IMG/VR virus record: IMGVR_UViG_3300029893_000001
Coordinates: 124,001-188,000 of that record
Length of the DNA stretch: 64,000 nt
Direction: 5' to 3' (one strand)
Positions within the stretch are counted from its first letter, which is position 1. Each line of letters opens with the position of its first letter. The notes under the pieces are model-generated. The model made no database searches, had not been told where the DNA came from, and saw nothing but the letters and a program-made list of their open reading frames with translations. Of this stretch, positions 2,918-60,120 are shown in pieces. A program made the translations under genes and the position numbers.

Positions 2918-2933
2918 AGTATCGGGAGGGTTC
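2918..2933 (-). promoter_or_regulatory. phage promoter-like motif GAACCCTCCCGATACT
   Basis: 1 of 10 copies; directly upstream of the Y RNA-like cluster. Confidence 0.7.
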
Positions 2934-3094
2934 GACAACTGGGTCGGGGTCAGCCCAGCGTCCCCTGCCGCTCCATCAGCGAGCAGGCGCCCTCGCGGGA
3001 ATGGCAATTATATCCATTCCCGAGGACGGTATCGCTAATGCTGGCAGGCAGGAGTCGCATGAGAGACCGTAGCGTAGCACGTGCCACAAGGACG

Positions 3095-3946
3095 TCAAGC
3101 ACTTTTCTCTGGGCGCTCTACCAGCTCCCACGGAGGGTGGGGCGAGACGAACGCTGAGGCCCCTTGGTGACCACCCCCACCGAACATCTCTGCAAGTTTG
3201 GCAGCGTCGAAGTTTCCGTTGGATCGTACAGAGTACTTGAACGTCCCGTTCGAGCGCTGAAACCAGCCCACAGCAAAGTAATTCGCCGGGGCTAGTTCAT
3301 TCAAAAGTGAGCTGATATTGATCCCAGAGGCATTCACTACAGGGACGTCATGGTAGCCCGCAAACTTAGCAAGCCTCACATTCTTCTTGCAGTCTGTGAT
3401 TGCAATGCGCTCTGCCCGCAAAACTGCCTCACCAACCGTAAGTACCGATGTCATGTTGTTCTCGATCTGAGAAGCCAGCCATGACCACGTCTGAAAATCC
3501 CCAAGAGGATAACTAAAGATGGCAGCGCTGACGATGTGGGAATTTGGCATGGTCCAACGCCAAATGTCCCGATCTTCAACATAGTCAACGAGCAAAGGTC
3601 TCTTCTGGCCTGGATGAAAGAAATCCCACGCCATACCAGCGCCACTACGATTCATGTCAAAGAGACAGAAGTCCAGACCGTGGCATCTAGCCTCATTTGT
3701 CTTATGGTGATCGATGACGGTGAGCTTTCGAGCCCTGGCCGCGTAATCAACCAACTCGTTGCGAGTTGGACAATAGTCTATGATGTAGACTTCTCGTCCA
3801 TCCACGTCGAAGACATCTGTAGGCCAATAGTTCGCAGGGACATATTCCGCAGCGCCTCCGAACTTGCGCCATGCTGCCCACGCGGCAGTCCATCCGTCAG
3901 CGCAGTCACCGTGGTATACAACCAAAATGTTCTTACGATCAGTCAT
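3095..3946 (-). CDS. DHH/DHHA1 family phosphoesterase
   Basis: YHGDCADG, IID, DHH, SGA and GGGGH motifs. Confidence 0.9.
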   Translation of the reverse strand: MTDRKNILVVYHGDCADGWTAAWAAWRKFGGAAEYVPANYWPTDVFDVDGREVYIIDYCPTRNELVDYAARARKLTVIDHHKTNEARCHGLDFCLFDMNRSGAGMAWDFFHPGQKRPLLVDYVEDRDIWRWTMPNSHIVSAAIFSYPLGDFQTWSWLASQIENNMTSVLTVGEAVLRAERIAITDCKKNVRLAKFAGYHDVPVVNASGINISSLLNELAPANYFAVGWFQRSNGTFKYSVRSNGNFDAAKLAEMFGGGGHQGASAFVSPHPPWELVERPEKSA

Positions 3947-4266
3947 GAACGACTCGATTCCTTCGACTCCAACAACTCCTCAACGACGCACCATCCTTCT
4001 ACCCACGAGACGTACTCATTCCAGGAAAACCCAAGGAATTCGTGCAATGGCTTTGTACTATTTGAGTTGTGCCAAGCGTCGATGGCCGTATCAAGCACTT
4101 CGTCCAAATCTTGACCCTCGAACTCTCCAGCCAACGCACGAGTTACGAAGCTACGAGAGCTAAAGTCGACTCGCGGGCTCCGCACCACAAACATGAGAAG
4201 CTTGAGAACTCTAGGAGTAATCCAAGACAGCATGACGTCCTCTTTAAAAAGAGGCGAGGCCAGCAT
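3943..4266 (-). CDS. hypothetical protein
   Basis: ORF whose stop overlaps the DHH start (ATGA); start uncertain. Confidence 0.6.
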   Translation of the reverse strand: MLASPLFKEDVMLSWITPRVLKLLMFVVRSPRVDFSSRSFVTRALAGEFEGQDLDEVLDTAIDAWHNSNSTKPLHEFLGFSWNEYVSWVEGWCVVEELLESKESSRS

Positions 4267-4344
4267 AGCCTTGCCGGCCCCGCCGAGTTTTGCTGTATTC
4301 TATGAATACGGCATCCTGTCCATTCTATCACACCAACGGCGTTT

Positions 4345-4728
4345 AATCTCGTGTATTAGATCTGAGTGTCTGCGTCATTCTGTTAGACCACCTCTCCGCA
4401 CGTAGCTCAATCCAGGAGGGGATTAGGGGAGGGGTCAAGATTGAGCTACGTGCGGAAAGGGCTGGATTCGCACCAGCATTTCAGACATGTCATCACGAGA
4501 ATTCGAGATGGTGATCGGACAAGACCTCCAAACTTAGGGAATAGCCTCAGCTTTACGTCTAAGTCCGAAGTAGCGCTGCCTCTTCCAGTTGGGCTACCTC
4601 CCCATACTCAGCGGGGAAGGAAGGATTCGAACCTCCACTGTAGCGTCTTCAGATCAGTTTGATTCTGAGTTTGGTCCCTACGGAAATCCCAAGGGAAACC
4701 CGAGTACAAGTCGGAACCCCGGGGAACT
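4345..4728 (-). ncRNA. ncRNA with two circularly permuted tRNA-like domains
   Basis: Domain 1 at 4564-4653 and domain 2 at about 4345-4503, each in T-arm / closed acceptor / D-arm order; G-U pairs only work on the minus strand; own promoter motif at 4736-4751. Confidence 0.75.
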
Positions 4729-4735
4729 GTAACCT

Positions 4736-4751
4736 ACTATCGACAGGGTTC
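4736..4751 (-). promoter_or_regulatory. phage promoter-like motif GAACCCTGTCGATAGT
   Basis: Repeat motif between the 246-aa gene stop and the ncRNA. Confidence 0.7.
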
Positions 4752-4778
4752 GCTGCCCTCAATAGTAGGCGTTAGCTC

Positions 4779-5519
4779 TTACTGGTTGCTCTCAGCAAAC
4801 ACGTAGCCAAAAAGGCTATCAGCAATCTGCTCGCGACGAATCTCGTACGAGTTCGCCTCTTCTCGCGCAAACTTAACTGCGTTTTGAAGCTTCGCAATGC
4901 GGGCCAAAAGGTCGTCCTTGCGATCCTGCGTGAGGGCGGCGGAATAGTGAATCGTTTTCCAGTATCCAACGACCACATCTTCCGAGACCTCCTTCACCTG
5001 AGCGGGATGCTCCTTAGTTGCCTCATAGAGAACAACCGGCTTGATGGTCTTCTTTGTCTTCGCCGACTCAGAGGGCTGAGTGCGGTAAGCAGACTGCCCC
5101 GGATCCCAATCCCACGTTTGTGAAGGGTCAAGAACGGGAAGCTTCGACACGAAAGTGTGCAAGTCTACGAGCTGCTTCTCTAGAAAGAGCAAGTAGGTTA
5201 CCGGAACGTCGGACACAAGGACTTTTCCGTCTACAACGACGTTCGCAGTAGCCTTGAGGTTTGCCTTGTCCTTCGTGAAGGTGATGTCAAACATCTCGGC
5301 CAAACACGTCTGCACGTCATTCAGAACGTTCTTTGCACGTAGCTGAATCTTCTGCGACTCGGGAGGAAAGCGTTCGCCATCCTCGTTGGTTGGCGAGTAA
5401 GTACGCTCGCGTCCTTCATACAGAGAAGGTACCTGAGACTTCTTGTGGAGGTCGGTTAGAGACCGGTTCGAAGATGCCTTCACGCCCTTCTCAATTGCAA
5501 GGATCTGGTTGAGTTTCAT
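4779..5519 (-). CDS. conserved uncharacterised coiled-coil protein (MKLNQILAIEKGVK..; recalled as DUF7873-like)
   Basis: 246 aa, good RBS (GGAG), helical N- and C-termini around a beta-rich insert. The family name is from memory only. Confidence 0.8.
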   Translation of the reverse strand: MKLNQILAIEKGVKASSNRSLTDLHKKSQVPSLYEGRERTYSPTNEDGERFPPESQKIQLRAKNVLNDVQTCLAEMFDITFTKDKANLKATANVVVDGKVLVSDVPVTYLLFLEKQLVDLHTFVSKLPVLDPSQTWDWDPGQSAYRTQPSESAKTKKTIKPVVLYEATKEHPAQVKEVSEDVVVGYWKTIHYSAALTQDRKDDLLARIAKLQNAVKFAREEANSYEIRREQIADSLFGYVFAESNQ

Positions 5520-5633
5520 TTTCAGTCTCCTGGAACTTTAGCAAAAGAAGCAAGTGGCCACTCGAACACGTGAGTGGGCTTAGTGCCCAATTTGGGCAAA
5601 TTTCTACCCAAAGTGGGTAGGAATTTCTACAAG

Positions 5634-5705
5634 CACCCGCGGAGAGGATCGAACTCCCATCCCTGGTTCCGTAGACCAGTGCTCTATCCGTTGAGCTACG
5701 CGGGC
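5634..5705 (-). tRNA. tRNA-Arg(ACG)
   Basis: GCCCGCG/CGCGGGT acceptor, CTACGGA loop. Confidence 0.93.
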
Positions 5706-5848
5706 AACGCCGGGCAGGGGAATTGCGATCGAGCCCCTACCCCACACCAGAAACCCATCTCTGGCACGGTCCTGCGACCGTTTTTGACAGACGACCACCT
5801 TCTGTCGGGTTCTAAGAAGACAAGGAAGAAAGCTAGTTTAGTAAGAAC

Positions 5849-6142
5849 TCAGGAGTTGTCAACAACTCCGATGATCTCTTCCTCAGCGAGGACAAGATGC
5901 TTCTTGCCTCCAAGCTCAATTTCCGTCCCTGCATACTTTGGCAGAAGTACTACATCGCCTCTCTTAACGTGAGGTTCGATGAGTCTGCCATGTTCGGTCA
6001 CCCGACCTGGTCCTACAGCAACCACAGTGCCACGATTCGACTTTTCCTGTGCCATCTGCGGGATGATTAGACCGCTCTCTGTCCTTTCCTGAACTTCGCT
6101 GAGTAGAACAAGGACTCGATCGCCTAACGGACGAAAATTCAT
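5849..6142 (-). CDS. groES: co-chaperonin GroES
   Basis: PLGDRVLV, TESGLIIP, VVAVGPG, VKRGDVVL, KYAGTEI motifs. Confidence 0.97.
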   Translation of the reverse strand: MNFRPLGDRVLVLLSEVQERTESGLIIPQMAQEKSNRGTVVAVGPGRVTEHGRLIEPHVKRGDVVLLPKYAGTEIELGGKKHLVLAEEEIIGVVDNS

Positions 6143-6158
6143 GATATTCTCCTTTTAC

Positions 6159-6632
6159 CTACAACACTTCAGCGTAGGACTGACCACGCCTAATTCTACC
6201 AACGCAACTATGTGCGTGTCCAGTCTGCCGCGCAACTTCGCGATCAGAGAGACCGCGAGATAGTAACGCCCTAATTTTCCTAACCTCAGATGCGAGAAGC
6301 AATCTTCTTCTACTAGGCCGAGAGGATGACAAGGCCTTGTCTATCTGACGTTGCCGTCTCATTCCCATAAGAGGGTACAATCGCTGCATTAGATCAACGG
6401 CAGGAAAACCCTTGACAGTGAAGAAAAACACACGTTTCCATCTTGGGTTCTTCTTGTCCTGGTAGGACCCTACGGTCCCGTGCCCAACAATCAGCCGTAC
6501 CTTTTGTACCACATCTTCATCCGTCATTTGAACAGAAATGCGTGGAGAAGACGGATCGGAAGGAGGCCCCCTCAAAAATGAACCTTCTCCCTCAAGAAGG
6601 CCTGCCAACCAAGATAAATCAGTATCAGTCAT
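6159..6632 (-). CDS. LAGLIDADG homing endonuclease with C-terminal HTH
   Basis: WLAGLLEGEGSF, ISVQMTD, C-terminal GLSDREVARQTG. Confidence 0.85.
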   Translation of the reverse strand: MTDTDLSWLAGLLEGEGSFLRGPPSDPSSPRISVQMTDEDVVQKVRLIVGHGTVGSYQDKKNPRWKRVFFFTVKGFPAVDLMQRLYPLMGMRRQRQIDKALSSSRPSRRRLLLASEVRKIRALLSRGLSDREVARQTGHAHSCVGRIRRGQSYAEVL

Positions 6633-6643
6633 ATGGTGGGTAA

Positions 6644-7041
6644 TGGACCCGCTGGTATCGAAACCAGGTCCTCGAACGCCTAACTGACTCCGCTACGTGT
6701 GTAGTCTCATTTACCCGCAGATTACGCGCTGCAGGAAGCCGAGACAAGCACCGCGAGGGGCACAACGGCCCTCCACCACTAACCCTTTAGACTTAGCTCG
6801 GTCGGGTCAGAAACCGAGGTGCAACCCGAGTCGATGAGCCGCAGAGGACTATCGGGTGTCCTCCCCTGCGACACCTCACGCCGCGAGGGGCAGAGGCTCG
6901 GCGGTGCCATTGTCGTTAGCAACGACATTGCCGAAGAGGGAAACTACGTTGTTCGCAGTTCTTCATGGGCTTTTAACGAGGCCAGCCCACCTCGACACGC
7001 AGAATCAGGTCGGTTCGTCCGAGTCGAAGCCTTTCGGGCCC
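6644..7041 (-). ncRNA. ssrA: tmRNA; tag reading frame 6956-6876 encodes ANNVVSLFGNVVANDNGTAEPLPLAA*
   Basis: Acceptor GGGCCCG/CGGGTCC-A with the G3:U70 pair, GGCTTCGAC, PK1 (GAGG-TGGGC..CCTC..GCCCA), GACTACACACGTAG, tag ending in LAA. Confidence 0.92.
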
Positions 7042-7180
7042 GGACGCTGCCTTTCGGCAGCTAACTGATGGTATGTGTAGAGAAACACATACCAACAGAA
7101 AGGTACAAAGCTAAGCCAGCTATCACTGAGCCAGTGACGAAGAGCGAGAGAAAAGTATCTCTCGCAAAGCTTTATACGGT

Positions 7181-8164
7181 TCACTGACATAGTCCAGAAA
7201 CCGTTTTCACCAAAAGGCCCGGCTCACTAAGATCGTCTTCATACTCAAAGACAGCGCCAGCAGGGCCCAGAGCATCCTTTACAGAGTCGAGAATAGACTG
7301 CATGACACCACCGTCTTTTTCTCTACCGTACACCCTAAAGAGAACCTGAAAGCCCCCGTCCTGTCGGTCAAAGACGTTCCACGTAAGAACGGGACGGTCC
7401 ATGCGTTGGTGCTTCTGAAAAGCAGAGGCTAACATGACTTGAACGCCCTCATCTTGATAAGTGCTAGCCACTTGGTTCGCAATCTGCGCCCCGATGCGCG
7501 CCACGTCATTAAACACGAGATTCTTTGCTAGAATCTCTAGGCGTGATGAAGCCTTTTTCTTGTTGTCATCCCCATACTGGGACTTACCTGGTTCGGACTT
7601 GACTTCTCCGTTTTCTCGTTGCTTCCCAGTATTTTTCAAGTGGTGTTTCCTGCAAAGTAGCCGGCACTTCTTGACTTCTCGTTTGAATTCCGCCTCGGGC
7701 ACGGACCAGAGTTTCGTGATTGTGAAGCTCTTATCACTCGGGTTCTTATGGTCCAATTCCAAGTTCTCGGTAGAGCCGCAAGTCACACACTTGCCCCCGA
7801 GCATCTTGATCGCTTGCTTTTTGCGTTCGTGGTACCGGTTCTTCTGGTACTTACGCTGATACTCATTCCTAGAGGGATCGTGCTTGGCTTCTCTTGGAGG
7901 CTCCGCCTGGAGAGCCTTTTCGACAAGGGCACGGTCCCCAAAGAGATATTCGTAGTTCTTACGACCCGCATGGTGAAAGTCTAGGACGTGGAAGAAATAA
8001 TCCACAGGACTAGCAAACAATCGAAGGGGCTCTCCATTGAAGTCTACGTTTTTACCGCTCCTGAGAACGCGGAGAAGCTGGTTAACGCCGTCAGCAATCA
8101 TCTCTCGCCGCAAGAGTGGATAACGTGCGCAAAGTACTTGAACTAGAGCTTCTGTCCTGGACAT
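7181..8164 (-). CDS. protein with an internal HNH endonuclease domain
   Basis: LGGKCVTCGSTENLELDHKNP...CRLLCRKHH in the middle of a 327-aa protein. Confidence 0.75.
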   Translation of the reverse strand: MSRTEALVQVLCARYPLLRREMIADGVNQLLRVLRSGKNVDFNGEPLRLFASPVDYFFHVLDFHHAGRKNYEYLFGDRALVEKALQAEPPREAKHDPSRNEYQRKYQKNRYHERKKQAIKMLGGKCVTCGSTENLELDHKNPSDKSFTITKLWSVPEAEFKREVKKCRLLCRKHHLKNTGKQRENGEVKSEPGKSQYGDDNKKKASSRLEILAKNLVFNDVARIGAQIANQVASTYQDEGVQVMLASAFQKHQRMDRPVLTWNVFDRQDGGFQVLFRVYGREKDGGVMQSILDSVKDALGPAGAVFEYEDDLSEPGLLVKTVSGLCQ

Positions 8165-8180
8165 ACGTCCATCAGATAAG

Positions 8181-8252
8181 TCGGCGGGACAGGATTTGAA
8201 CCTGCGACCACCGGTGTGTAAAACCGGCGCTCTACCCCTGAGCTACCCGCCG
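8181..8252 (-). tRNA. tRNA-Val(TAC)
   Basis: CGGCGGG/CCCGCCG acceptor, TTTACAC loop. Confidence 0.95.
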
Positions 8253-8274
8253 AAGAAACGTTCCTATTCCGTTT

Positions 8275-8991
8275 TCAACTTTGCTTGCGCTCTAACAACG
8301 CTAGCAAACCTCTATATGCAGCGGAGATTTGCTTGAACTTTTCTGCTGCATCTAATTCTTTACAGCGATCGGGGTGGTACCGAAAAGCCGCTCTTCTGTA
8401 CGCGGCCTTCAGCTCCCTAATCGTCACTCCAGCCCGAACGTTCAAAACCTTATACCACTCTATGGTATTAGGGTCAATTCGCGATTTGCGGGCGGCCTTT
8501 CGGCGTTCCGACTTCTTCTCCCTCTTTTTGGCTTCCCACCATTTCTTAAGACGCTGCCAATCTTGTTCTTCTATTGAGTAGAAATCCCGTCCGCGACGAG
8601 AGTCCAACGGGTCCCAGTTCCAGTAGGAACTAAAGTCCTCCGGAGACTCCTCAAATTCAACAAAGGGGCTTCGAAAGCTCTGAGACGGATTCGGACGTCG
8701 GAACGACGGTTCTCTCTCACTTTCCTCGTCAGTACAAGGCGATCGTCTTGGAGTAAAGGGCCTAATCTTTAGGGCCCACACCATTTTCGCTTCAGGAAGT
8801 AGAATCTCGTAGGGATCGGGGTTGAGCCGATTCATCACCTTGAACCAGCGACCCCGAACCTCCAAAATTAAGGAACGAACTGGCTCTCCAGACGCAGCAG
8901 ACTCCAGGAATACGATATCGCCTACAGTTAGGCGGTGTGCAGGAATTCGTACAACTCCTGAAGGAAGAGAACCGGGAAAAGGCGGAAGCAC
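8275..8991 (-). CDS. DnaJ-domain protein (C-terminal J domain)
   Basis: WYKVLNV...LKAAYRRAAFRYHPD...EKFKQISAAY. Confidence 0.88.
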   Translation of the reverse strand: MLPPFPGSLPSGVVRIPAHRLTVGDIVFLESAASGEPVRSLILEVRGRWFKVMNRLNPDPYEILLPEAKMVWALKIRPFTPRRSPCTDEESEREPSFRRPNPSQSFRSPFVEFEESPEDFSSYWNWDPLDSRRGRDFYSIEEQDWQRLKKWWEAKKREKKSERRKAARKSRIDPNTIEWYKVLNVRAGVTIRELKAAYRRAAFRYHPDRCKELDAAEKFKQISAAYRGLLALLERKQS

Positions 8992-9000
8992 TCAACTAAT

Positions 9001-9495
9001 CTAGCGACGTTTGGCCGCAAGTCGAAGCGAATTCGACTTTTTCTTCTTGGAAGACTTCTTCCATTCTGCCCAGCGTTGCCAGCTACGGAAAATCTTCCAG
9101 AGTCTCTTTTGTTCGAATTCGATGGCTCGTCTGTAATCGGGGTGCTTCTGCTCCATGCACATGAAACGGATGCTATGAGGATGCCCATAACCATCTTCGC
9201 TGAACTGCTGTGGCCCATGCTGGAGATGGAGCATTTCATGATAGACCACGAAATCCAAATACCACAAAGGAACCCTGGAGTCATCCATTATCGAGCTTAC
9301 CTTAATCAGTCGCTCATCAAAGACGCACACAGCTTGAAGGGGCTGATACGAAGCGTCTATCTCTTTCTTGCTCAAAGGAAATGTCCGCCAGCCAATTCCG
9401 CCGCAAACAAGCCCGCCGAAGTACTCTAGATTTATCTTGTCAAACCTCTTCAGGAGGTTCGTTTTGCGCGTTTTGGGTTCCCTGGGCTTCCGCAT
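9001..9495 (-). CDS. SprT-like zinc metalloprotease domain protein
   Basis: FDKINLEYF, HEMLH...H motif; GGAGGAGG RBS before ATG 9495. Confidence 0.75.
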   Translation of the reverse strand: MRKPREPKTRKTNLLKRFDKINLEYFGGLVCGGIGWRTFPLSKKEIDASYQPLQAVCVFDERLIKVSSIMDDSRVPLWYLDFVVYHEMLHLQHGPQQFSEDGYGHPHSIRFMCMEQKHPDYRRAIEFEQKRLWKIFRSWQRWAEWKKSSKKKKSNSLRLAAKRR

Positions 9496-9612
9496 TCGAC
9501 AACCTCCTCCGTATCTCAGATAAGGCGGTCTATGCCAGAATTTGACCCGGCCAAGGTCGCACAAAACGTAACGATATCAATACGTTACAAACAGGTACAA
9601 AATTGCCACAGA

Positions 9613-9684
9613 TGGGTCGTGCAGGGATCGAACCTGCGACCGTCGGGTTAAAAGCCCGCTGCTCTACCGCTGAGCTAACGACCC
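9613..9684 (-). tRNA. tRNA-Lys(TTT)
   Basis: GGGTCGT/ACGACCC acceptor, CTTTTAA loop. Confidence 0.96.
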
Positions 9685-9688
9685 GGCT

Positions 9689-9895
9689 TCAAGCCCCGCA
9701 TTGTGTTACACACAACAGCAGGACTAAGAAGGCAAGGATTGCCGAAGCCACAAAGATTCGCGAAGGCCAAATAGGACGAGACGCCAACATTGCATCGTAC
9801 TCTGCCTGAAGCTCTGGATTATCCAGAAGCTCGTCGTAGGAGTACTGCTGCCAATTCAACGTTTGGGTTTGAGTCTCATCTTGGTCCATCTTCAT
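9689..9895 (-). CDS. small membrane protein
   Basis: C-terminal hydrophobic helix; coupled to the upstream gene. Confidence 0.6.
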   Translation of the reverse strand: MKMDQDETQTQTLNWQQYSYDELLDNPELQAEYDAMLASRPIWPSRIFVASAILAFLVLLLCVTQCGA

Positions 9896-10203
9896 CCTAC
9901 CTGTGCCAGCATAAGTAACTGGTAGCGGTAGGAGTTCGATTCTCGGTGAGTCTTACGCTTGTGACAGTTAGAGCATAGAACTTGGCACTTGTCAAGTTCT
10001 AAGCTGAGCTGCTCCCACGTGCAGTTTGATTGGATCAGCTTTGAGATGTCAGCCCGTTTGCTGTGAAGGTGGTCGAATTCGAGAACCAGGGGATCGTCTT
10101 CTCCGCATATCGCGCATTCTCGCTCGCAGAGGTAGGAGAAGATTTGTTGCTTTTTGTCATATACCTGACGCTTCCGATCAGCTCTCGTTTTACCCACGCT
10201 CAC
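9892..10203 (-). CDS. HNH endonuclease
   Basis: CAICGEDDPLVLEFDH...CQVLCSNCH. Confidence 0.85.
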   Translation of the reverse strand: MSVGKTRADRKRQVYDKKQQIFSYLCERECAICGEDDPLVLEFDHLHSKRADISKLIQSNCTWEQLSLELDKCQVLCSNCHKRKTHRESNSYRYQLLMLAQVG

Positions 10204-10277
10204 TCCTTCGAGTGGGACACAAAGTAGATAAGTGGCCTTTCTACTTTCGTATTTGTGGGTCGAACGAAAATACGGGG

Positions 10278-10607
10278 TCAGGTAGCTGCGGAAGAGGCTC
10301 TAAGTGCGGCGGCCTTTTCGCGCTCCTGCCGAGCCTGGCGGTCGCGCAAGATTTCAACTCCTTTGGGAGTTAGTTCCACGGAGGCAGGCTTTACAAGCTG
10401 CACACCACCACCGGTTGCGTCCACGGGCTTTACGAACTTCGTCTTGAAGACCTTCTTGATGTGCCTGCATGGCTCGTCGCGATTGTCCTTGAAAAAGAAA
10501 TCAAGACAAGTGCACTCAAACCGACTTCCTCTACGGATGACGATGTGACGCTTTGTCCGATCACGTGTCGAATCGACATACGCAACAGTCGTACGCTTCA
10601 TGTTCAA
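10278..10607 (-). CDS. SWIM zinc-finger protein
   Basis: CTCLDF...PCRHI (CxC..CxH). Confidence 0.75.
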   Translation of the reverse strand: MNMKRTTVAYVDSTRDRTKRHIVIRRGSRFECTCLDFFFKDNRDEPCRHIKKVFKTKFVKPVDATGGGVQLVKPASVELTPKGVEILRDRQARQEREKAAALRASSAAT

Positions 10608-10813
10608 ATCCTCCTCGAACGGGCAAGAGCAGTAATAGCTAGGTCCAAATGTGCTTTGGCTTCGCTGAGGTCATAAAGCTCTTCGTCCAAGCCATAGTTC
10701 TCCAGAAGCGAAATCTGTGAAGCCATTTCCTCAGCCGCTTCTCTTAGCTTGTGCTTCGTTGGTTTAAGAGCGTCACGCACGAGATGTTTTACTGCAAGAC
10801 TCACTGCCTCCAC
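10604..10813 (-). CDS. hypothetical protein
   Basis: Small helical ORF coupled to the next gene. Confidence 0.55.
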   Translation of the reverse strand: MEAVSLAVKHLVRDALKPTKHKLREAAEEMASQISLLENYGLDEELYDLSEAKAHLDLAITALARSRRI

Positions 10814-10822
10814 CCTTAAACT

Positions 10823-10861
10823 AAGAAGGGCACCCCTCTTTTACAGAAGGGCGCCCTTCTT
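10823..10861 (-). terminator. hairpin, probable terminator
   Basis: AAGAAGGGCGCCC/GGGTGCCCTTCTT after the ParB-like gene. Confidence 0.55.
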
Positions 10862-10877
10862 ACGATCCTACAGCCTA

Positions 10878-11804: not shown

Positions 11805-11857
11805 GTTTGGGATTTTCCTTTCGCTCGAACAAGCAACTTGCACTAAGGCAAGTCAAC

Positions 11858-11873
11858 ACTATCGAGAGGGTTC
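11858..11873 (-). promoter_or_regulatory. phage promoter-like motif GAACCCTCTCGATAGT
   Basis: Copy of the repeat motif upstream of a gene start. Confidence 0.7.
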
Positions 11874-13091: not shown

Positions 13092-13101
13092 GGTGGTCCC
13101 C

Positions 13102-13117
13102 ACTATCGACAGGGTTC
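13102..13117 (-). promoter_or_regulatory. phage promoter-like motif GAACCCTGTCGATAGT
   Basis: Motif copy 10 nt upstream of ATG 13091. Confidence 0.7.
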
Positions 13118-13616
13118 ACTTCTTACGCTTTCGAAGCACTTTCTCAATAAAGCGCCGCTTATGCCGACTAAGGTGGTCTATCATCAACTTACCGTCCAGG
13201 TGCTCTCCTTCATGCTGAACGCATTGAGATGCAAGTCCTGTGTAGTGAAAGTTGAAGGCATTCCCGTTTCGGTCTAAAGCCTTCCCGGTCACCCATTCAT
13301 ACCGTGGAATAGACTCCACGATTCCCGGAAACGACAAACACCCCTCGTCGCGCATCAAGACCAACTTCTCAGGAGTTTGAAGAACTTCGTGGTTAACCAG
13401 GACTTCCAGTTTCGACTGGTCTGAAGATGTGTCCATTACGAATACACGAAGAGGTATTCCCACCTGAGTGGCTGCCAGCCCAGCTCCGCGATGAGCGTAC
13501 ATGGTCTCAGCCATGTCGTCCACGATACGCTGAAAATCAGCCCCAAACTCACTCACTGGGCTGGCAACGACGCGCAGCTCGGGATCGGGCCAAATCCTAA
13601 TTCGAAGCCGTGTCAT
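13116..13616 (-). CDS. def: peptide deformylase
   Basis: GAGLAATQ, EGCLS, QHEGEHLDG motifs. Confidence 0.95.
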   Translation of the reverse strand: MTRLRIRIWPDPELRVVASPVSEFGADFQRIVDDMAETMYAHRGAGLAATQVGIPLRVFVMDTSSDQSKLEVLVNHEVLQTPEKLVLMRDEGCLSFPGIVESIPRYEWVTGKALDRNGNAFNFHYTGLASQCVQHEGEHLDGKLMIDHLSRHKRRFIEKVLRKRKK

Positions 13617-13672
13617 ACCCATTAAACGAAAAGGGCCGAGCCTCACCGCTCGGCCCTTTTCGTTTAATGGGT
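13617..13672. repeat. perfect 25-bp inverted repeat (hairpin/terminator)
   Basis: 13617-13641 is the reverse complement of 13648-13672. Confidence 0.85.
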
Positions 13673-14422: not shown

Positions 14423-14439
14423 CTTTCTTTTGCCTTCCT

Positions 14440-15190: not shown

Positions 15191-15227
15191 ATGTATTCTG
15201 TGGGCACGTAGCCCACCATCACTGTTC

Positions 15228-15517: not shown

Positions 15518-15520
15518 CAT

Positions 15521-15536
15521 AGTATCGGCAGGGTTC
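15521..15536 (-). promoter_or_regulatory. phage promoter-like motif GAACCCTGCCGATACT
   Basis: Motif copy pointing antisense into the plus-strand gene. Confidence 0.65.
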
Positions 15537-20912: not shown

Positions 20913-20938
20913 GGGTCCTCCTTTAGGGTCAGCATTTT

Positions 20939-20954
20939 ACTATCGGCAGGGTTC
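20939..20954 (-). promoter_or_regulatory. phage promoter-like motif GAACCCTGCCGATAGT
   Basis: Motif copy just downstream of a terminator. Confidence 0.72.
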
Positions 20955-24150: not shown

Positions 24151-24177
24151 GGTAAGCCTCCAAGTTTGGAGTGCATC

Positions 24178-24193
24178 ACTATCGTTAGGGTTC
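24178..24193 (-). promoter_or_regulatory. phage promoter-like motif GAACCCTAACGATAGT
   Basis: Motif copy upstream of the RNA ligase. Confidence 0.7.
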
Positions 24194-29815: not shown

Positions 29816-30880
29816 TCAGGCAACCTGATTCTTGTACGACTTGTAGCGCTCTCGAAGATGGTCAGAGACCTGCTTTGTCGAGAGATCTAAGTACTTGCAC
29901 AGCAGCTTTACAAGACGTCTGGGATTCTCAACTAGCGAGTCAGCACTCACACTGTGTTGCTCCGCCAACCAAGCCTCGAACTCATCGTCGGTACCTACTC
30001 CGAACACGAAGTCAACGACGCGCTGGACCTCCGGGCTGGCTCCCTCTCTGAGGGAGTCAAGAAGGCTCTGATTCGCAATGCGATCTTCGGCTTCTGACTT
30101 GACCTTTCCGAGTGATCCCAGGGCAAGCCCTTCCATGCTCAGAGTAGTCACTCTGTAATCGGCGACCGCCTGAGGACACCGCTGCGGCTTCTCAGTGAGG
30201 CAGAATATGCAAGTACCACAACCAACTGTTGCATTCTTCACGCAGGCCCTGGCCTCACTCGTAAAATGTTGGATGAGGTTAATGGCGTGGTTCTGAATCG
30301 ACGCCTTTGCGTAGTTTTCGATCATTTTCAGGTCCTTCGTGTGTTCATACAACCGAACTACCTGAATTCCATGAGCTAACAATTCTGCCCGCAGATCAGC
30401 CAAATCAAACGAATTATCGTTGTCGCTGAGGAACCGCAGCTTAAGATAGCTCACCTTTCCGCAGTACTTGTCCAACTTTCCAACGAGGTCCCTCATTTCC
30501 TCTTTGGAAAGAAAGCCGTACTCGTCTTCTTTTGAAGATGCTTCAATGTGTTGCTTATCACCTTCGCTAAGCGCGGCCCAAACGAGTGTCATACCCTCCA
30601 GATCTGCAGTGAACTTGGTAGCAGATTCCTGGAAATTCGTTCCCGTATTCAACGAATACCGCACTGCGCGCCAAATCTTCCGACACTCAAAAGAAGCCTT
30701 CACGAAGTTTCGAACTTCTTTGTAGAAGAGGTCATACGCAGGCTTGCTAAGGGCCTTAATCCGGTCGCGATACTCCTTATACTCGTTGGCCAGGATAAAG
30801 TGGGAGACAGCACGAAGGGCAATTCGCTTCTCCTCACGGGAAAGGTTCTTGAAGAAAGGTTTCAGGCTCTCGCGAAGCAT
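29816..30880 (-). CDS. hypothetical protein, candidate divergent sigma factor
   Basis: Region 2-like DLRAEL...NYAKASIQNHAINLI; C-terminal HTH-like CKYLDLSTKQV. Confidence 0.45.
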   Translation of the reverse strand: MLRESLKPFFKNLSREEKRIALRAVSHFILANEYKEYRDRIKALSKPAYDLFYKEVRNFVKASFECRKIWRAVRYSLNTGTNFQESATKFTADLEGMTLVWAALSEGDKQHIEASSKEDEYGFLSKEEMRDLVGKLDKYCGKVSYLKLRFLSDNDNSFDLADLRAELLAHGIQVVRLYEHTKDLKMIENYAKASIQNHAINLIQHFTSEARACVKNATVGCGTCIFCLTEKPQRCPQAVADYRVTTLSMEGLALGSLGKVKSEAEDRIANQSLLDSLREGASPEVQRVVDFVFGVGTDDEFEAWLAEQHSVSADSLVENPRRLVKLLCKYLDLSTKQVSDHLRERYKSYKNQVA

Positions 30881-34218: not shown

Positions 34219-34780
34219 TTACGTACGCACTATCAGAAGGGTTCGAGAACACCGGGCAAAAAAACAGCGACAGCCCCAAAAGGCGAGAAGGTGAAGTATC
34301 CTGGGTTGTCAGGTCATATATCAGGTCCATGCCCTGCTTGAACCGCGAAAGCTCAGAAGAGTCCACCGAATGCATCGTCCAGTCATCGTAAATAGGAACC
34401 CGACCCGGGCCCAACAAATCGTAGGCGCATCTAAGCGTACGCCCTCCCGGGGTCTGGACTTCTGCCGCGAGTAAAGCAGCGTCACCAGGAGAAGCCACGG
34501 AGTTTACTTCGGACAGCAAAACAGCCCGTCGTGCCTGCAAATGCCTTACCTCGTACTTAACCTGCTCCAGGAAAGCACCAGGTGTGGGGTGCGAAAACCC
34601 AAGAACAAAAGACCCCTCCGTCTCCCCGAAAACAAATGCACACGGAGGTACTGCCGCCTGCTTTTGGTTGTGGTACTGCCAAGCAAATTCACGAAGACGA
34701 GGATCCAGATAATCCAACACGTCGTCTTCGTGAAATTTGTGGATATTGCGGAAGGGGGATTCTACGAGCAGGAAACGCAT
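34184..34780 (-). CDS. hypothetical protein
   Basis: ORF. Confidence 0.6.
   Translation of the reverse strand: MRFLLVESPFRNIHKFHEDDVLDYLDPRLREFAWQYHNQKQAAVPPCAFVFGETEGSFVLGFSHPTPGAFLEQVKYEVRHLQARRAVLLSEVNSVASPGDAALLAAEVQTPGGRTLRCAYDLLGPGRVPIYDDWTMHSVDSSELSRFKQGMDLIYDLTTQDTSPSRLLGLSLFFCPVFSNPSDSAYVSDSSRTDSGGA
34229..34244 (-). promoter_or_regulatory. phage promoter-like motif GAACCCTTCTGATAGT
   Basis: Motif copy 10 nt upstream of GTG 34218. Confidence 0.65.
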
Positions 34781-48557: not shown

Positions 48558-48680
48558 ATTTGGTCGACCTTAGGTTGGTTTCGAAATAAGCAGGCCTTGC
48601 AAAGTTCTGAACTTGAACTTTCGAGCTTTTAGCACGTGGCAATCAGTAGATAAGAGAAGCGGTTGAAGGTTTAAGTGACA

Positions 48681-56991: not shown

Positions 56992-57010
56992 TTCGATACC
57001 TCCGGTCCTT

Positions 57011-57026
57011 AGTATCGACAGGGTTC
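57011..57026 (-). promoter_or_regulatory. phage promoter-like motif GAACCCTGTCGATACT
   Basis: Motif copy upstream of RBS and ATG 56991. Confidence 0.72.
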
Positions 57027-57669
57027 AGTTGTACAGTTCGCGCAGTAGATTTCGGTCTGCGTCTGTGAGACGCGGACGCGTGAGGCGATCCCCGTCTGGA
57101 CGCAACTCCCTGTACATAGCTGAATCGGCAAAATCATCGTGGGCCAATCCTAAGCAATGCCCTAGCTCGTGGACCAAAACCTTGTCGACCATTTCTGCCG
57201 TGCCGTTATTCCAAGTACGAATGACACAAGACAAGCGTCCGTGTTCTCGACGATGTGACGCGTCCCCACCTACGTCACTCATATTGGGATCACCAACAAC
57301 CTGAGTGGTCTCGAAATCAATCCTAATCTCCGAAGAAGGATCGCTGGACACCCTTAGTGCAGTAAACCCGACTCTGGAGTTAATTAGATCTACGGCACTC
57401 TGCGCTGCCTGATGGGGATTTGTTGGAGGATTGGGGTTACTGCTCACCACAAAGACGTCAAGGGGAAGCTGTGAACGCTCCCACTCAACAGGATAACACT
57501 CACCCTGATAGTTCAGGACTCCTGATGGAGTATCACACGCTGTCAGCAACCCAGACTCTCGATGAGTCAGAATCCCGATAGGCAAAAGGACAGCGACCGC
57601 AAGAAAGAGCAAAGCAAGTCCAACGATCATTACTTTGCCTCCGGTGTCAAGCTTCTTATACCATTCCAT
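57025..57669 (-). CDS. membrane-anchored matrixin (M10) metalloprotease
   Basis: HELGHCLGLAH plus SAMY Met-turn; N-terminal TM helix. Confidence 0.88.
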   Translation of the reverse strand: MEWYKKLDTGGKVMIVGLALLFLAVAVLLPIGILTHRESGLLTACDTPSGVLNYQGECYPVEWERSQLPLDVFVVSSNPNPPTNPHQAAQSAVDLINSRVGFTALRVSSDPSSEIRIDFETTQVVGDPNMSDVGGDASHRREHGRLSCVIRTWNNGTAEMVDKVLVHELGHCLGLAHDDFADSAMYRELRPDGDRLTRPRLTDADRNLLRELYN

Positions 57670-57677
57670 ATGTCCTC

Positions 57678-59525
57678 CTAAGACAGGCCAAGCAAGGTCT
57701 TTCTTGCTGACGAGTCAGATCCCATCAGTGACAAAATGATCTCTTTGTCGTTAGGACCCAGCGAAATCTTCCACAGTTTACGACTAGCTGGATCCATAGC
57801 ATAATAGCGAAGTTCTTCAGCACTTGCTTCCCCGTGTCCCTTCAGGCGGGAAACCTGAAGCTGAGAAGCCGGCCTTCCGGAAAGAGACTCCAACTCCTGA
57901 AGGTTGTGGGCGTACCATCTCTGGTCCTTGTACACTCCTACGTACAAAGGACTGTTTACGACATAAAGGTATCCCTTCCGAACGAAATCTGTCAGCCAAG
58001 TGCAGAAGAATGTCAAAACCAAACTAGCAATGTGCGATCCATCCGGGTCGGCGTCCATCAGAAGAAGAACCTTACCAACTCGAACGTTCGACAGGTCAAC
58101 GTCCTTACCTCGGGGGCCCAACTGCACGCCAGTAGCCTTCAAGACCGCAGCGAATTCAGTATTCTGAAGCAGCTTGTCTGGTGAGGACTGAACGGCGTTA
58201 GGGATTTTCCCCTTCAAGGGCAACACTTCTTGATAATCGGGGTCCCTAGCCACCTTGGCGTTACCGCCCGCGGAATCTCCCTCGACAATAAAAAGCTCCC
58301 GATCCTCGGGACGGCAATGCATCGCCTCCACCAATTTGTCAGGTAAAACGCCTCTGGCATCCTTCTTCGTCGAAGTTTGATTGATGACACTACGTAGCTT
58401 TTTATAGCTGTCTCGGGCCTTCTTGATCTGAATAGCGCGAGCGACGATTTTCTCTGCAAGCTTTTTGTTCTGGTCAAAGAATGACTTGAGCTGTGGGTAC
58501 ACGACACCGTATACTTCGTCGCGTACCTCTGCGTTCAGGAGCTTGTCTTTCGTCTGGCTCTTAAATTGAGGCTCAGTTACGAGGACTTGAACTGCAGCGT
58601 AGAGACCATCGACCAGGTCTCTCACATCAACTGCCTTCTTCTTCGCGTAAGGACCGAGTACGTCCGATATCGCGCGCATGGCGCCATCGACATGCTTACC
58701 GCCTTCAGGCGTGGAGCTAGCATTACAGGCGCTAAACCAATTCTCGCCCTCTTCTTCTGTCCAGAGGAAGGCTGCAGATACCTTCCTGTCCTTACTCTCC
58801 AACACAATAGGTTCATGAAGAACCTTAGCTGCGTGCGCCCGGACTTGAACAAGACGCGATAAGCCCTTACTCTCGAAGCAATGATCCTTCCCATCCACTA
58901 AAAGGCGGATTTTGAGACCGGGACAAAGATGACTGGTCTCTTCAAGCCACTGCTTCGTTCGGTCTAGATCGATTTTGTGGCTACCGAAAATTTGAGGGTC
59001 CGGACGAAAGCAAACCTCTGTTCCCGTACGCCCTCGCTTGTTCAGAGCCTTGTTAATTTTAGGCTCCTTTGTCTGAATCTGACCGCGTTCAAATCTCTGC
59101 TCGTAACAAATTCCTGAACGCCACACCCGCGCAAGAAGCCACTCACTCAGTGCGTTCGTTGCCTTCAGTCCTACACCATGAAGGCCAGCAGACACTGCAT
59201 ACGATTGCTTCTCAAATTTGCCTCCGGCCTGAAGATTGGTGAAAACCGTAATGAGCGTGCTCTCGCCGGTTTTCTTGTGTCTTTCTACAGGAATTCCGCG
59301 TCCGTCATCCAACACACGAAACGTATTCTCTTTCGTATCAACCTCGACCTCAATTAGGGTCGCATGACCTGCAAGCCACTCGTCGATTGAATTATCGACG
59401 ACTTCCTTGAGGATATGCCTAATTCCGTCCGAATCCTGGCTTCCGATGTACATTCCAGGACGCTTCCGTACATGCTCCAGATCTTCCAGGACCTGGATTG
59501 CATCGGCTCCGTAAGACTTCGTCAT
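57678..59525 (-). CDS. gyrB: type IIA topoisomerase subunit B (GyrB/ParE-like)
   Basis: HVRKRPGMYIG, EVVDNSIDE, DDGRGIP, GLHGVG, VEGDSA, PLKGK, DADPDG. Confidence 0.92.
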   Translation of the reverse strand: MTKSYGADAIQVLEDLEHVRKRPGMYIGSQDSDGIRHILKEVVDNSIDEWLAGHATLIEVEVDTKENTFRVLDDGRGIPVERHKKTGESTLITVFTNLQAGGKFEKQSYAVSAGLHGVGLKATNALSEWLLARVWRSGICYEQRFERGQIQTKEPKINKALNKRGRTGTEVCFRPDPQIFGSHKIDLDRTKQWLEETSHLCPGLKIRLLVDGKDHCFESKGLSRLVQVRAHAAKVLHEPIVLESKDRKVSAAFLWTEEEGENWFSACNASSTPEGGKHVDGAMRAISDVLGPYAKKKAVDVRDLVDGLYAAVQVLVTEPQFKSQTKDKLLNAEVRDEVYGVVYPQLKSFFDQNKKLAEKIVARAIQIKKARDSYKKLRSVINQTSTKKDARGVLPDKLVEAMHCRPEDRELFIVEGDSAGGNAKVARDPDYQEVLPLKGKIPNAVQSSPDKLLQNTEFAAVLKATGVQLGPRGKDVDLSNVRVGKVLLLMDADPDGSHIASLVLTFFCTWLTDFVRKGYLYVVNSPLYVGVYKDQRWYAHNLQELESLSGRPASQLQVSRLKGHGEASAEELRYYAMDPASRKLWKISLGPNDKEIILSLMGSDSSARKTLLGLS

Positions 59526-59533
59526 CGAAACTC

Positions 59534-60103
59534 CTAGAGGTGGGCCTTTATACGCTCAAGAACCCGTTCAGCCCAAATGCGATACGAATAAAACCTGAAA
59601 TGCACGCCGTCAGGGGCATGCAAAAGATCCTCAGTATCGACACGGCTGTTTACCCACTCGACAGTAAGAGGCAACAGCATGGCTTGTCCGTGAGAAGCGA
59701 GTCGATGTCGCTCGTCTACCGCAGGGTGCCTAGAAACTGGAGGACCTAGCCAAACAACGTCGGCAGAACCTACCTGTTGTAGAATCCATTCCAACTCGTC
59801 CAGGTACGAGGAAGAGCGAGTCACTCTCGATCGATCATTACCACCAAGCGAAACTATTACCAAATCGGCTCCCTGAATTCGACGCCGCAAAAGCGAACCC
59901 GAACGTCTGTACGACCGACACGACCATCCCCGTCGTGCGACAACGTGTACAGTGTGACCCTGAGAAGTCAAGGCAGAACGTAGATAAGGCGCCAGTCCTT
60001 CCATATGAGAGTCACCTACCAACGCGATGTCCAAAGCAACAGCACGAACAGGAGCCAACAACAGCGCGAGAGCAATAAGTAGCGAGGACAACGGAGACCA
60101 CAT
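59534..60103 (-). CDS. secreted SGNH/GDSL hydrolase
   Basis: Signal peptide, GDSH, GGND, DGVH. Confidence 0.85.
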   Translation of the reverse strand: MWSPLSSLLIALALLLAPVRAVALDIALVGDSHMEGLAPYLRSALTSQGHTVHVVARRGWSCRSYRRSGSLLRRRIQGADLVIVSLGGNDRSRVTRSSSYLDELEWILQQVGSADVVWLGPPVSRHPAVDERHRLASHGQAMLLPLTVEWVNSRVDTEDLLHAPDGVHFRFYSYRIWAERVLERIKAHL

Positions 60104-60104
60104 T

Positions 60105-60120
60105 ACTATCAGCAGGGTTC
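60105..60120 (-). promoter_or_regulatory. phage promoter-like motif GAACCCTGCTGATAGT
   Basis: Motif copy at a gene junction. Confidence 0.6.

What the first reader, a model, noticed from the sequence alone, without database searches (positions are those of the whole stretch)
2918..60120. Ten copies of a contiguous 16-bp motif GAACCCTNNYGATAST define a phage regulon
SEEN at 2918, 4736, 11858, 13102, 15521, 20939, 24178, 34229, 57011 and 60105, always on the minus strand and at gene junctions. Two copies follow terminator hairpins and two sit upstream of ncRNA clusters. The CGATA core resembles the sigma28-type -10 box, but GAACCCT sits only 2 nt upstream rather than at -35. Two copies lie 10 nt from the start codon, implying nearly leaderless mRNAs. 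INFERENCE: a promoter for a phage-encoded sigma factor or RNA polymerase.
Basis: partly seen in the sequence, partly recalled or inferred. Interest (0 to 1): 0.62.

Follow-up and report, generated by a model that had tools for sequence, protein, structure and literature searches.

The report
Compact phage-specific promoter, many copies
The repeated 16-18-base motif is real and is almost certainly the main early/middle promoter of an uncultured 392-kb phage; related phages carry diverged versions in the same register, and the factor that reads it is probably phage-encoded but is not identified.

Summary
All ten copies are present, all on the minus strand, against zero expected by chance.

The window lies in a complete 392,328-bp phage record from subsurface metagenomes. 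The strict motif occurs 31 times genome-wide. A relaxed form, GAACCCNNNYGATANTR, occurs 63 times on the minus strand and never on the plus strand. 58 of 63 copies are intergenic in a genome that is 89% coding. Copies usually lie 16-45 nt before a start codon.

Complete relatives carry diverged versions in the same register: AAAGTCC..CGATAsTA in G002 and CCAACCCTGGCCATACTA in G005. In G005 the motif's orientation follows gene orientation on both strands.

No -35 element accompanies the motif. Start codons without a ribosome-binding site pile up exactly 7 nt after GATAsT. That implies a transcription start about 7-8 nt downstream, which is sigma-type -10 geometry and not T7-like.

No phage RNA polymerase was found. 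Two sigma-like genes were: an RpoD-like one outside the window, and a structurally sigma-like one at window 29816-30880.

My best reading is a one-block, -35-less promoter for host core polymerase plus a phage specificity factor. Which factor reads it is unresolved, and no transcript data exist. Two further promoter-like classes coexist with it.

The parts
2917..2933 (-). Motif copy (GAACCCTCCCGATACTA). It precedes a weak YrlA-like match at 2725-2876 and tRNA genes.
4735..4751 (-). Motif copy. It precedes about 470 nt of non-coding sequence with a T-loop-like stretch, then a 96-aa ORF.
11857..11873 (-). Motif copy, 53 nt before a 308-aa gene (phrog_5931, function unknown).
13101..13117 (-). 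Motif copy. Its 5' end overlaps the TGA stop of the upstream gene. An ATG of a 410-aa ORF lies 10 nt after it.
15520..15536 (-). Motif copy directly after a strong hairpin. tRNA-Met lies about 330 nt downstream.
20938..20954 (-). Motif copy 10 nt after a terminator-like hairpin with a T run, and 26 nt before a 139-aa gene.
24177..24193 (-). Motif copy 27 nt before an RNA-ligase-like gene (367 aa).
34228..34244 (-). Motif copy at the head of a gene row: 506-aa protein, AAA/MoxR-like ATPase, 179-aa protein, sigma-like 354-aa protein, clamp loader, SbcC-like protein. Operon structure is not shown; a TTATCTA site at 35103-35109 lies further upstream.
57010..57026 (-). Motif copy overlapping the upstream TGA stop, 19 nt before a 121-aa gene that has a ribosome-binding site. 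It lies between the two type II topoisomerase (GyrB-like and GyrA-like) genes.
60104..60120 (-). Motif copy overlapping the upstream TGA stop. An ATG follows 1 nt after it (189-aa ORF; the true start is uncertain).
29816..30880 (-). Candidate reader, unproven: a 354-aa protein homologous to PaBG gp112. Its predicted fold matches sigma domain 2 and, weakly, domains 2-4. It has a conserved CGTCxxC...C motif and sits next to the clamp loader gene.

Best explanation
The motif is a promoter. It is a single contiguous block of about 18 bp with no -35 element, and it drives most early/middle genes, tRNAs and small RNAs of this phage.

Inferred mechanism:
- A bacterial-type (host core) RNA polymerase uses GATAsT as a -10-like melting element and starts about 7-8 nt downstream of its T.
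- The adjoining upstream heptamer (GAACCCT here) is a phage-specific recognition element. It has drifted in related phages while the downstream half stayed the same.
- Specificity most likely comes from a phage-encoded factor. The two visible candidates are the RpoD-like sigma (450 aa, G000 246993-248345, outside the window) and the sigma-like 354-aa protein at window 29816-30880.

Shown: the sites, their strand and position rules, their conservation and divergence in relatives, the spacing peak, and the presence of the sigma-like genes.

Inferred: that transcription starts there, the start position, and which factor reads the motif.

Rough odds: a promoter of some kind 0.9; sigma-type geometry 0.7; a phage-encoded sigma-like factor gives the specificity 0.55.
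For: Copy number and strand: 10 of 10 copies confirmed with 0 expected. There are 31 strict and 63 relaxed copies genome-wide, with none on the opposite strand.

Position: 58 of 63 copies are intergenic and lie mostly 16-45 nt from start codons. Hairpins are enriched just upstream.

Relatives: G001 has 6 copies on one strand, some at orthologous positions where the motif is a conserved island in otherwise diverged spacers. G002 and G005 have same-register variants, with 38 sites found in each.

Orientation: in G005 all 6 minus-strand copies precede minus-strand genes. 30 of 32 plus-strand copies directly precede plus-strand genes; the other two are ambiguous and none contradicts.

No -35 element: information content is flat upstream of the block.

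Spacing: among 145 sites, ATG codons opening ORFs of at least 45 codons peak at exactly 7 nt after the T (7 cases; other offsets of 15 nt or less have 0-2). A second peak at 19 nt has ribosome-binding sites.

Polymerase and sigma genes: no phage RNA polymerase appears in Pfam/PHROG scans of all ORFs of 450 aa or more, nor in catalytic-motif searches. The RpoD-like sigma is conserved in all 8 related records. Its regions 2.3-2.4 and 3.0 are invariant and its region 4.2 is shortened. The second sigma-like protein is described.

Literature: Iyer et al. 2021 (PMC7824862) place PaBG, this phage's nearest cultured kin, in their group 2 of jumbo phages, which they describe as lacking polymerases and encoding sigma factors of two types.
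Against: There are no transcript data of any kind; no RNA run holds this phage.

Nothing ties either sigma-like protein to this motif rather than to the two other promoter-like classes found, TTTAGAC-N17-TTATCTA and TGTAAA-N8/9-ATG.

The RpoD-like sigma's DNA-reading regions are invariant across relatives whose upstream half-motif differs. That fits the invariant classes at least as well as this one.

A contiguous, near-invariant 17-18-bp block that diverges between relatives is the hallmark of single-subunit phage polymerase promoters. Many large proteins remain unannotated, including ones of 2813, 1687 and 931 aa.

Dense copies in front of small genes at 356-392 kb look like an early region. 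A phage sigma would have to be made or injected first.

The gene calls are home-made, and the leaderless peak rests on 7 cases.
Confidence: 0.55

Rival explanations
1. It is a promoter for an unrecognised phage-encoded RNA polymerase (single-subunit or other). As in T7, T3 and SP6, one contiguous block would hold a variable specificity part and a conserved initiation part.
For: The block is contiguous, near-invariant and 17-18 bp long, with no -35 element. The upstream half diverges between relatives while the downstream half is kept. The segment AACCCT..nnnATA resembles the T3 promoter from memory. Several very large proteins have no annotation.
Against: PF00940 found nothing, although its control rang nowhere, so this is weak evidence. 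No T7-type or two-barrel catalytic motif occurs in any plausible candidate. There is no polymerase PHROG or Pfam hit in any ORF of 450 aa or more. The leaderless spacing peak puts the start 7-8 nt beyond the block rather than adjacent to it. The group that holds its nearest cultured kin, PaBG, is described as lacking polymerases (PMC7824862).
Confidence: 0.13
2. It is a promoter read by a host sigma factor without phage help. That would be either the host primary sigma using a -10-only promoter, as in hosts rich in leaderless mRNAs, or a host sigma-28-like factor.
For: GATAsT fits the nAnnnT pattern of -10 elements. The G000 consensus contains GCCGATA(A), the sigma-28 -10 box as I recall it. 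Dense copies before small genes look like an early region, which normally uses host holoenzyme. Leaderless starts are frequent in this phage.
Against: The invariant upstream heptamer has no counterpart in host promoter types known to me, and it differs between related phages. There is no TAAA box at the sigma-28 distance. No bacterial genome among 185,579 species holds several exact copies of the 17-mer consensus; only the exact consensus was tested. Classical sigma-70-type sites are depleted in the window.
Confidence: 0.15
3. It is not a promoter. It would instead be an RNA-processing site, an operator for a regulator, or part of a terminator/antiterminator signal at gene junctions.
For: The element is strand-specific and junctional, which an RNA-level signal would also be. 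Many early-cluster copies are followed by ATCGGC, making a short inverted repeat with GCCGAT, and one copy (G000 926) has a perfect 12-nt inverted repeat. Hairpins are common just upstream.
Against: The block is asymmetric, without dyad symmetry, so it is unlike a dimer operator. A copy sits in a divergent intergenic region where no upstream same-strand transcript is expected, and it is conserved in G001. Copies precede tRNA genes and gene rows. The fixed 7-nt and 19-nt spacings to start codons fit initiation.
Confidence: 0.07

Closest known systems
T7/T3/SP6-type single-subunit polymerase promoters (from memory)
   Same: One contiguous block of about 17-23 bp, nearly invariant within a genome and present in tens of copies. 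The specificity part diverges between related phages while the initiation part is conserved. The AACCCT segment even resembles the T3 promoter.
   Different: No such polymerase gene was found. The inferred start is 7-8 nt beyond the block instead of at its edge. The structural gene block lacks the motif.
T4 late promoters (TATAAATA) read by gp55 with gp33 and the sliding clamp (from memory; group context in PMC7824862)
   Same: Both are -35-less, -10-only promoters read by host core polymerase plus a phage sigma-like protein. The phage shares T4-like genes: rIIA, UvsX, baseplate wedge and clamp loader.
   Different: The element here is twice as long, with a GC-rich upstream half, and it marks early/middle-looking genes rather than structural ones. 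The co-resident TGTAAA class resembles the T4 late box more closely.
Sigma cascades of Bacillus phage SPO1 (gp28, gp33/34) and the -35-less promoters of phiEco32 gp36 (from memory)
   Same: Phage-encoded sigma factors redirect host core polymerase to phage-specific promoter classes, giving several classes per genome.
   Different: SPO1 classes are two-block promoters. No sequence similarity of the elements is known to me. Nothing was tested here.
Sigma-28 / FliA -10 box GCCGATAA (from memory)
   Same: The G000 consensus tGCCGATA(a/g/c) matches 7-8 of 8 positions.
   Different: There is no -35 TAAA box. Relatives have GACGATA or GGCCATA. Fold matches of the 354-aa protein to sigma-28 are no better than its matches to other sigmas.
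Pseudomonas phage PaBG (Baikalvirus) and kin, sigma gene 118 and putative sigma gene 112 (PMC7412058)
   Same: PaBG and phage NCTB are the nearest cultured relatives by terminase, at about 32% identity. The gene order small ORF - sigma - SSB, with UvsX and a topoisomerase gene close by, is shared. So are the DNA polymerase I with a UDG domain and a gp112 homologue. CTGTAAA is enriched in intergenic DNA of both.
   Different: PaBG has no GAACCC..GATA-type repeat. Its second enriched element is gcTAATTTAc. The PaBG genome paper read here (PMC7412058) uses the word promoter only once.

Membership tests
Bacterial-type (sigma-dependent) promoter | A -10-like element with A at position 2 and T at position 6, about 6-8 nt upstream of the start | tested here: inconclusive
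   GATAsT has the A and the T. The leaderless ATG peak at 7 nt after the T fits this geometry. No mapped transcription start exists.
Bacterial-type (sigma-dependent) promoter | A -35 element 16-18 nt upstream, or a TGn extended -10 | tested here: not met
   There is no information content at the -35 distance. The bases before GATAsT are t-g-c-Y, one position off TGn.
Bacterial-type (sigma-dependent) promoter | A sigma factor available to read it | tested here: met
   There is an RpoD-like sigma gene and a second sigma-like fold. The link to this motif is untested.
T7-like single-subunit polymerase promoter | A single-subunit RNA polymerase gene in the genome | tested here: not met
   PF00940 gave no hit, though its control rang nowhere. 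No polymerase motifs B or C in any plausible ORF. No hit in Pfam or PHROGs for any ORF of 450 aa or more. A very divergent enzyme is not excluded.
T7-like single-subunit polymerase promoter | Transcription starts at the 3' edge of the conserved block | tested here: inconclusive
   The spacing peak suggests a start 7-8 nt beyond the block. A few ORFs start 1-4 nt after it. There are no RNA data.
Sigma-28 (FliA) promoter | TAAA(GTTT) box 11-15 nt upstream of GCCGATAA | tested here: not met
   No conserved positions upstream of the block in 63 sites.
Sigma-28 (FliA) promoter | A -10 box GCCGATAA | tested here: inconclusive
   This is the consensus in G000 but not in relatives G002 and G005.
T4-type late promoter | An AT-rich 8-mer (TATAAATA) alone, upstream of late structural genes | tested here: not met
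   The motif is absent from the 184-309 kb block that holds the terminase, the portal and several tail and virion proteins, and its upstream half is GC-rich.

The most novel reading that the evidence does not exclude
A new clade of huge subsurface phages runs a three-step sigma cascade with three promoter classes:
- host sigma reads TTTAGAC-N17-TTATCTA, including the operon that holds the RpoD-like phage sigma;
- that sigma, whose region 4.2 is shortened, reads the one-block GAACCCT..GATAsTA class through a -10 contact plus a new contact at about -16 to -23 that evolves quickly between phages;
- this class expresses a zinc-bearing gp55-like sigma next to the clamp loader, which reads TGTAAA promoters and often produces leaderless mRNAs.
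Probability: 0.2. Interest if true: 0.7.

Novelty: new variant of a known kind. Interest (0 to 1): 0.5.

Why it matters
It gives a testable map of how an uncultured 392-kb phage organises transcription. That map has at least 63 copies of one compact promoter, two further promoter-like classes, two sigma-like proteins and frequent leaderless genes.

The same-register divergence of the upstream half between relatives is a natural specificity-swap series. If a sigma reads it, the series would show a way of recognising DNA just upstream of the -10 element that is not described for known sigma factors. It could also yield short orthogonal promoter/factor pairs.

It improves annotation of this phage group, because gene starts and operon heads can be placed from the motifs.

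Tried and rejected
Close phage relatives: none by DNA.

RNA evidence: the single run search found only DNA metagenomes (subsurface, rock, sludge).

Phage polymerase: the PF00940 scan, catalytic-motif regexes, Pfam/PHROG scans of all ORFs of 450 aa or more, PDB sequence searches of the 2813-, 715- and 826-aa proteins, and an Atlas look-up all found no polymerase. The Atlas placed the 1156-aa protein near tail sheath proteins.

The only DxDGD-type match is near the N-terminus of a 715-aa protein (phrog_1735, no Pfam or PDB match). I did not pursue it.

The sigma AF2 model was poor (pLDDT 63, region 2 below 50) and was not used.

The profile search of the 354-aa family against PDB sequences and Pfam gave nothing. 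Only fold comparison pointed to sigma, at middling scores: Foldseek E 0.1-1, VIA Z at most 8.2.

Fragmentary relatives G003, G004 and G006-G008 show no version of the motif. They may simply cover the motif-free block.

An over-represented 8-mer, TGTTCCTG, occurs on both strands with no shared context and is not a promoter.

The genome-contig scan found multiple hits only in one Methanotrichaceae MAG. There the 17-mer lies inside a multicopy repeat of more than 115 bp, so it is a chance match amplified by copy number.

I looked by eye for residues in either sigma-like protein that are shared by G000 and G005 but differ in G002, as the AACCCT half-site is. I saw none.

No paper contains the motif strings.

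Complex prediction was not used, because no protein pair with a claimed contact and a known host partner was available.


Full report
**Observation**

The pattern GAACCCTNNYGATAST occurs at exactly the ten stated positions. All copies are on the minus strand, and shuffled sequence gave none.

The window is bases 124001-188000 of a 392,328-bp virus record that CheckV rates complete. GC content is about 52%. Nearly all genes are on the minus strand, apart from a plus-strand block at about 271-306 kb.

The record is found in subsurface and rock metagenomes only. No RNA run holds it.

**Extent and anatomy**

The whole genome has 31 strict copies, all on the minus strand. Allowing the variation actually seen gives GAACCCNNNYGATANTR, with 63 copies on the minus strand and 0 on the plus strand.

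Position counts show one contiguous conserved block: y-GAACCC-t-g-c-Y-GATA-s-T-R. Nothing is conserved at a -35 distance or further downstream.

Copies are absent from 184-309 kb. That block holds the terminase, the portal, baseplate, tail-fibre-like and virion proteins and an M23 peptidase giant protein, but also the RNR-sigma-SSB-topoisomerase-UvsX row. Copies are densest at 356-392 kb, in front of many small genes.

**Position rules**

I used a home-made codon-usage gene caller. By its calls, 58 of 63 copies are intergenic in a genome that is 89% coding. The distance to the next start codon is mostly 16-45 nt, with a mode at 19-20 nt.

The T before the motif plus its first GA is often the TGA stop of the upstream gene. 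Strong hairpins lie within 50 nt upstream of 25% of copies, against 5% for other gene starts. Window copies 15521 and 20939 directly follow such hairpins.

The ten window copies precede the following:
- a weak Y-RNA-like match and tRNAs (2918);
- a long non-coding stretch (4736);
- a phrog_5931 gene of unknown function (11858) and a 410-aa ORF (13102);
- tRNA-Met, about 330 nt downstream (15521);
- a 139-aa gene (20939);
- an RNA ligase gene (24178);
- the row ending in the clamp loader and SbcCD-like genes (34229);
- two small genes near the type II topoisomerase (GyrA/GyrB-like) genes and just downstream of the DNA polymerase gene (57011, 60105).

**Relatives**

An exact-pattern scan of IMG/VR found one other record with several copies. 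This is G001, 58 kb, with 6 copies all on one strand. It is 64-72% identical in DNA to G000 over most aligned segments and syntenic with G000 288-341 kb. In pairwise alignments of four site-bearing spacers (three clearly orthologous), the motif stands out as a conserved island.

Using the phage's sigma protein as a probe gave seven more records. None has the G000 pattern. The two complete ones carry same-register variants:
- G002 has c-AAAGTCC-g-a-C-GATA-s-TA, 38 copies, all on one strand.
- G005 has ggCCAACCCTGGCCATACTAGr, 32 copies on plus and 6 on minus.

G005 has genes on both strands and so gives a natural orientation test. All 6 minus copies precede minus genes. 30 of 32 plus copies directly precede plus genes, two are ambiguous and none contradicts.

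So the downstream half (ATAsTA) is kept across relatives, while the upstream heptamer differs in G002 and by one base in G005.

**Where transcription would start**

I pooled 145 sites from the four genomes and looked for ATG codons that open ORFs of at least 45 codons. These peak at exactly 7 nt after the T of GATAsT, with 7 cases. Six of the seven have C as the base before the ATG, and none has room for a ribosome-binding site. Other offsets of 15 nt or less have 0-2 cases. A second peak at 19 nt has ribosome-binding sites.

I read the first peak as leaderless mRNAs that begin at or next to the A of the ATG. That places the start 7-8 nt downstream of the T, which is the geometry of a -10 element of a bacterial-type polymerase. 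A T7-like promoter would start at the block's edge.

This inference rests on seven genes, not on a mapped start.

**What could read it**

No phage polymerase was detected:
- PF00940 gave nothing, although its control genomes could not ring.
- Regexes for two-barrel and T7-type catalytic motifs found nothing credible.
- Pfam and PHROG scans of all ORFs of 450 aa or more found replication, recombination, nucleotide-metabolism and virion proteins only.

One gene has a Pfam sigma-70 region 2 hit. It also matches PHROG 351. In PDB sequences it matches regions 2 to 4 of SigA, SigB and RpoS proteins.

All eight homologues of this sigma keep regions 2.3-2.4 and the region 3.0 segment VSSNTWQHYAKL unchanged. 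Region 4.2 is shortened, and in G000 the protein ends five residues after an ERLRQ segment. The gene lies in a conserved row: RNR - DUF2400 - small ORFs - sigma - SSB-like, and then, in G000, a 101-aa ORF, a topoisomerase and UvsX. PaBG has the same sigma - SSB core, with UvsX and a topoisomerase gene close by.

A second candidate lies in the window at 29816-30880:
- It is homologous to PaBG gp112, which the PaBG authors flagged as a possible sigma (PMC7412058).
- It has 29 metagenomic relatives with no annotation.
- Its AF2 model has pLDDT 82.
- Its Foldseek hits are weak (E 0.1-1), but almost all of the top 50 are sigma chains of holoenzyme structures.
- An all-against-all structural search gives sigma domain 2 and sigma-28, sigma-32, sigma-B, ECF sigmas and the T4 gp45-dependent activation complex among many rows at Z 6-8. 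For helical proteins that level is only suggestive.
- The gene sits directly upstream of the clamp loader gene.

**Other promoter-like classes**

Two further intergenic motifs are strand-coupled to genes and conserved across the clade without change.

The first is TTATCTA, often with TTTAGAC 17 nt upstream. ATG codons peak 5 nt after it. It heads the RNR-sigma row in G000, and TTATCTA sites with similar upstream boxes lie upstream of the corresponding rows in G002 and G003.

The second is cTGTAAA followed by ATG at 8-9 nt. There are 42 such cases, counted over six records and both strands. TGTAAA occurs 73 times on the minus strand and 17 on the plus strand in G000. It precedes the DNA polymerase gene in both G000 and G002. 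CTGTAAA is also enriched in PaBG intergenic DNA, often just after terminators.

Classical sigma-70 consensus sites are fewer than chance in window 1-20000.

With three motif classes and three possible readers (host sigma and two phage sigma-like proteins), a cascade is an attractive model. The assignment is open, however. The invariant DNA-reading parts of the RpoD-like sigma fit the invariant classes at least as well as the variable one.

**Comparison with known systems**

The architecture works like a T7/T3/SP6 promoter in form: one block with a variable specificity part. In inferred geometry and gene content it works like a phage-sigma promoter: a -10-type start, no polymerase gene, and sigma genes present.

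It fails the sigma-28 test, because there is no TAAA box and relatives differ in the box. It also fails the extended -10 and T4-late definitions.

Iyer et al. 2021 (PMC7824862) describe their group 2 of jumbo phages, which includes PaBG, as lacking polymerases and carrying RpoD-like and minimal sigma factors. The PaBG genome paper reports no promoter analysis. No paper contains the motif strings.

**Verdict**

A promoter is by far the best reading.

The reader protein and the start site remain inferred.

I rate it a new variant of a known kind, of moderate interest.

**Limits**

Gene calls are my own rough ones. The host is unknown. There are no RNA data. The structural matches for the second sigma-like protein are of middling strength.

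Noticed in passing
window 63422-63427, 22055-22060, 12837-12842, 10840-10845, 2378-2383, 1895-1900 (minus strand); genome-wide in G000, G002, G005 and PaBG: A second strand-biased intergenic motif, cTGTAAA, is often followed by an ATG at 8-9 nt with no ribosome-binding site. One copy precedes the DNA polymerase gene. It is unchanged in relatives, enriched in PaBG intergenic DNA, and resembles the T4 late box TATAAATA.
   Followed up: partly
window 48647-48653, 35103-35109, 10225-10231 (minus strand); G000 251942 and others: A third motif, TTATCTA, often has TTTAGAC about 17 nt upstream, and ATG codons peak 5 nt after it. It is conserved across the clade and heads the RNR-to-sigma gene row in G000, with similar sites upstream of that row in G002 and G003.
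   Followed up: partly
window 29816-30880 (minus strand): A 354-aa protein homologous to PaBG gp112 has a predicted fold that matches sigma factors weakly. It has a conserved four-cysteine motif and sits directly upstream of the clamp loader gene at 28713-29807.
   Followed up: partly
window 2725-2876 (minus strand); G000 95509-97185: A weak Y-RNA-like (YrlA) match (31.6 bits, below the gathering score of 69) lies 41 nt downstream of motif copy 2918. The phage also encodes a Ro60/TROVE-like RNA-binding protein (phrog_850).
   Followed up: no
window 6641-7041 (minus strand) and 13 tRNA genes across the window: The phage encodes a tmRNA with an unusually long tag ending in LAA. It also has many tRNAs, including three tRNA-Pro in a row at 22416-22659.
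   Followed up: no
window 13116-13118, 57025-57027, 60119-60121 and about ten other sites in G000: The TGA stop codon of the upstream gene is built from the T before the motif plus its first two bases, so the gene end and the next promoter overlap.
   Followed up: partly
G000 360-392 kb; G000 926: Many early-cluster copies are followed by ATCGGCGAGGAGG, which forms a short inverted repeat (GCCGAT / ATCGGC) across the TAnTA. One copy has a perfect 12-nt inverted repeat of its own upstream half. This could be a regulator site or a shared 5' leader.
   Followed up: no
window 12320-12336 (minus strand): A degenerate copy with 2 mismatches (TAACCCTCATGATTGTA) lies inside the 410-aa ORF. It is probably not functional.
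   Followed up: no
window 60527-63412 (minus strand): The DNA polymerase I carries an N-terminal uracil-DNA glycosylase domain. The PaBG paper names the same fusion as a hallmark of that phage group.
   Followed up: no
L142-L145, L154, L156, L157 (Methanotrichaceae MAG contigs): The exact 17-mer consensus lies inside a multicopy repeat of more than 115 bp (7 copies aligned, about 95% alike) in one archaeal MAG. The flanks are unrelated to the phage, so this is taken as chance.
   Followed up: partly
PaBG (NC_022096.1), e.g. 165153, 176178, 205262: PaBG intergenic DNA is enriched in gcTAATTTAc, about 25-35 nt before start codons. It is a possible promoter class in a culturable relative.
   Followed up: no
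G000 248228-248734 and orthologues: A conserved gene of about 152 aa lies directly upstream of the RpoD-like sigma in all eight related records. It is weakly related to PaBG gp120 and has no family match. It could be a partner of the sigma.
   Followed up: no
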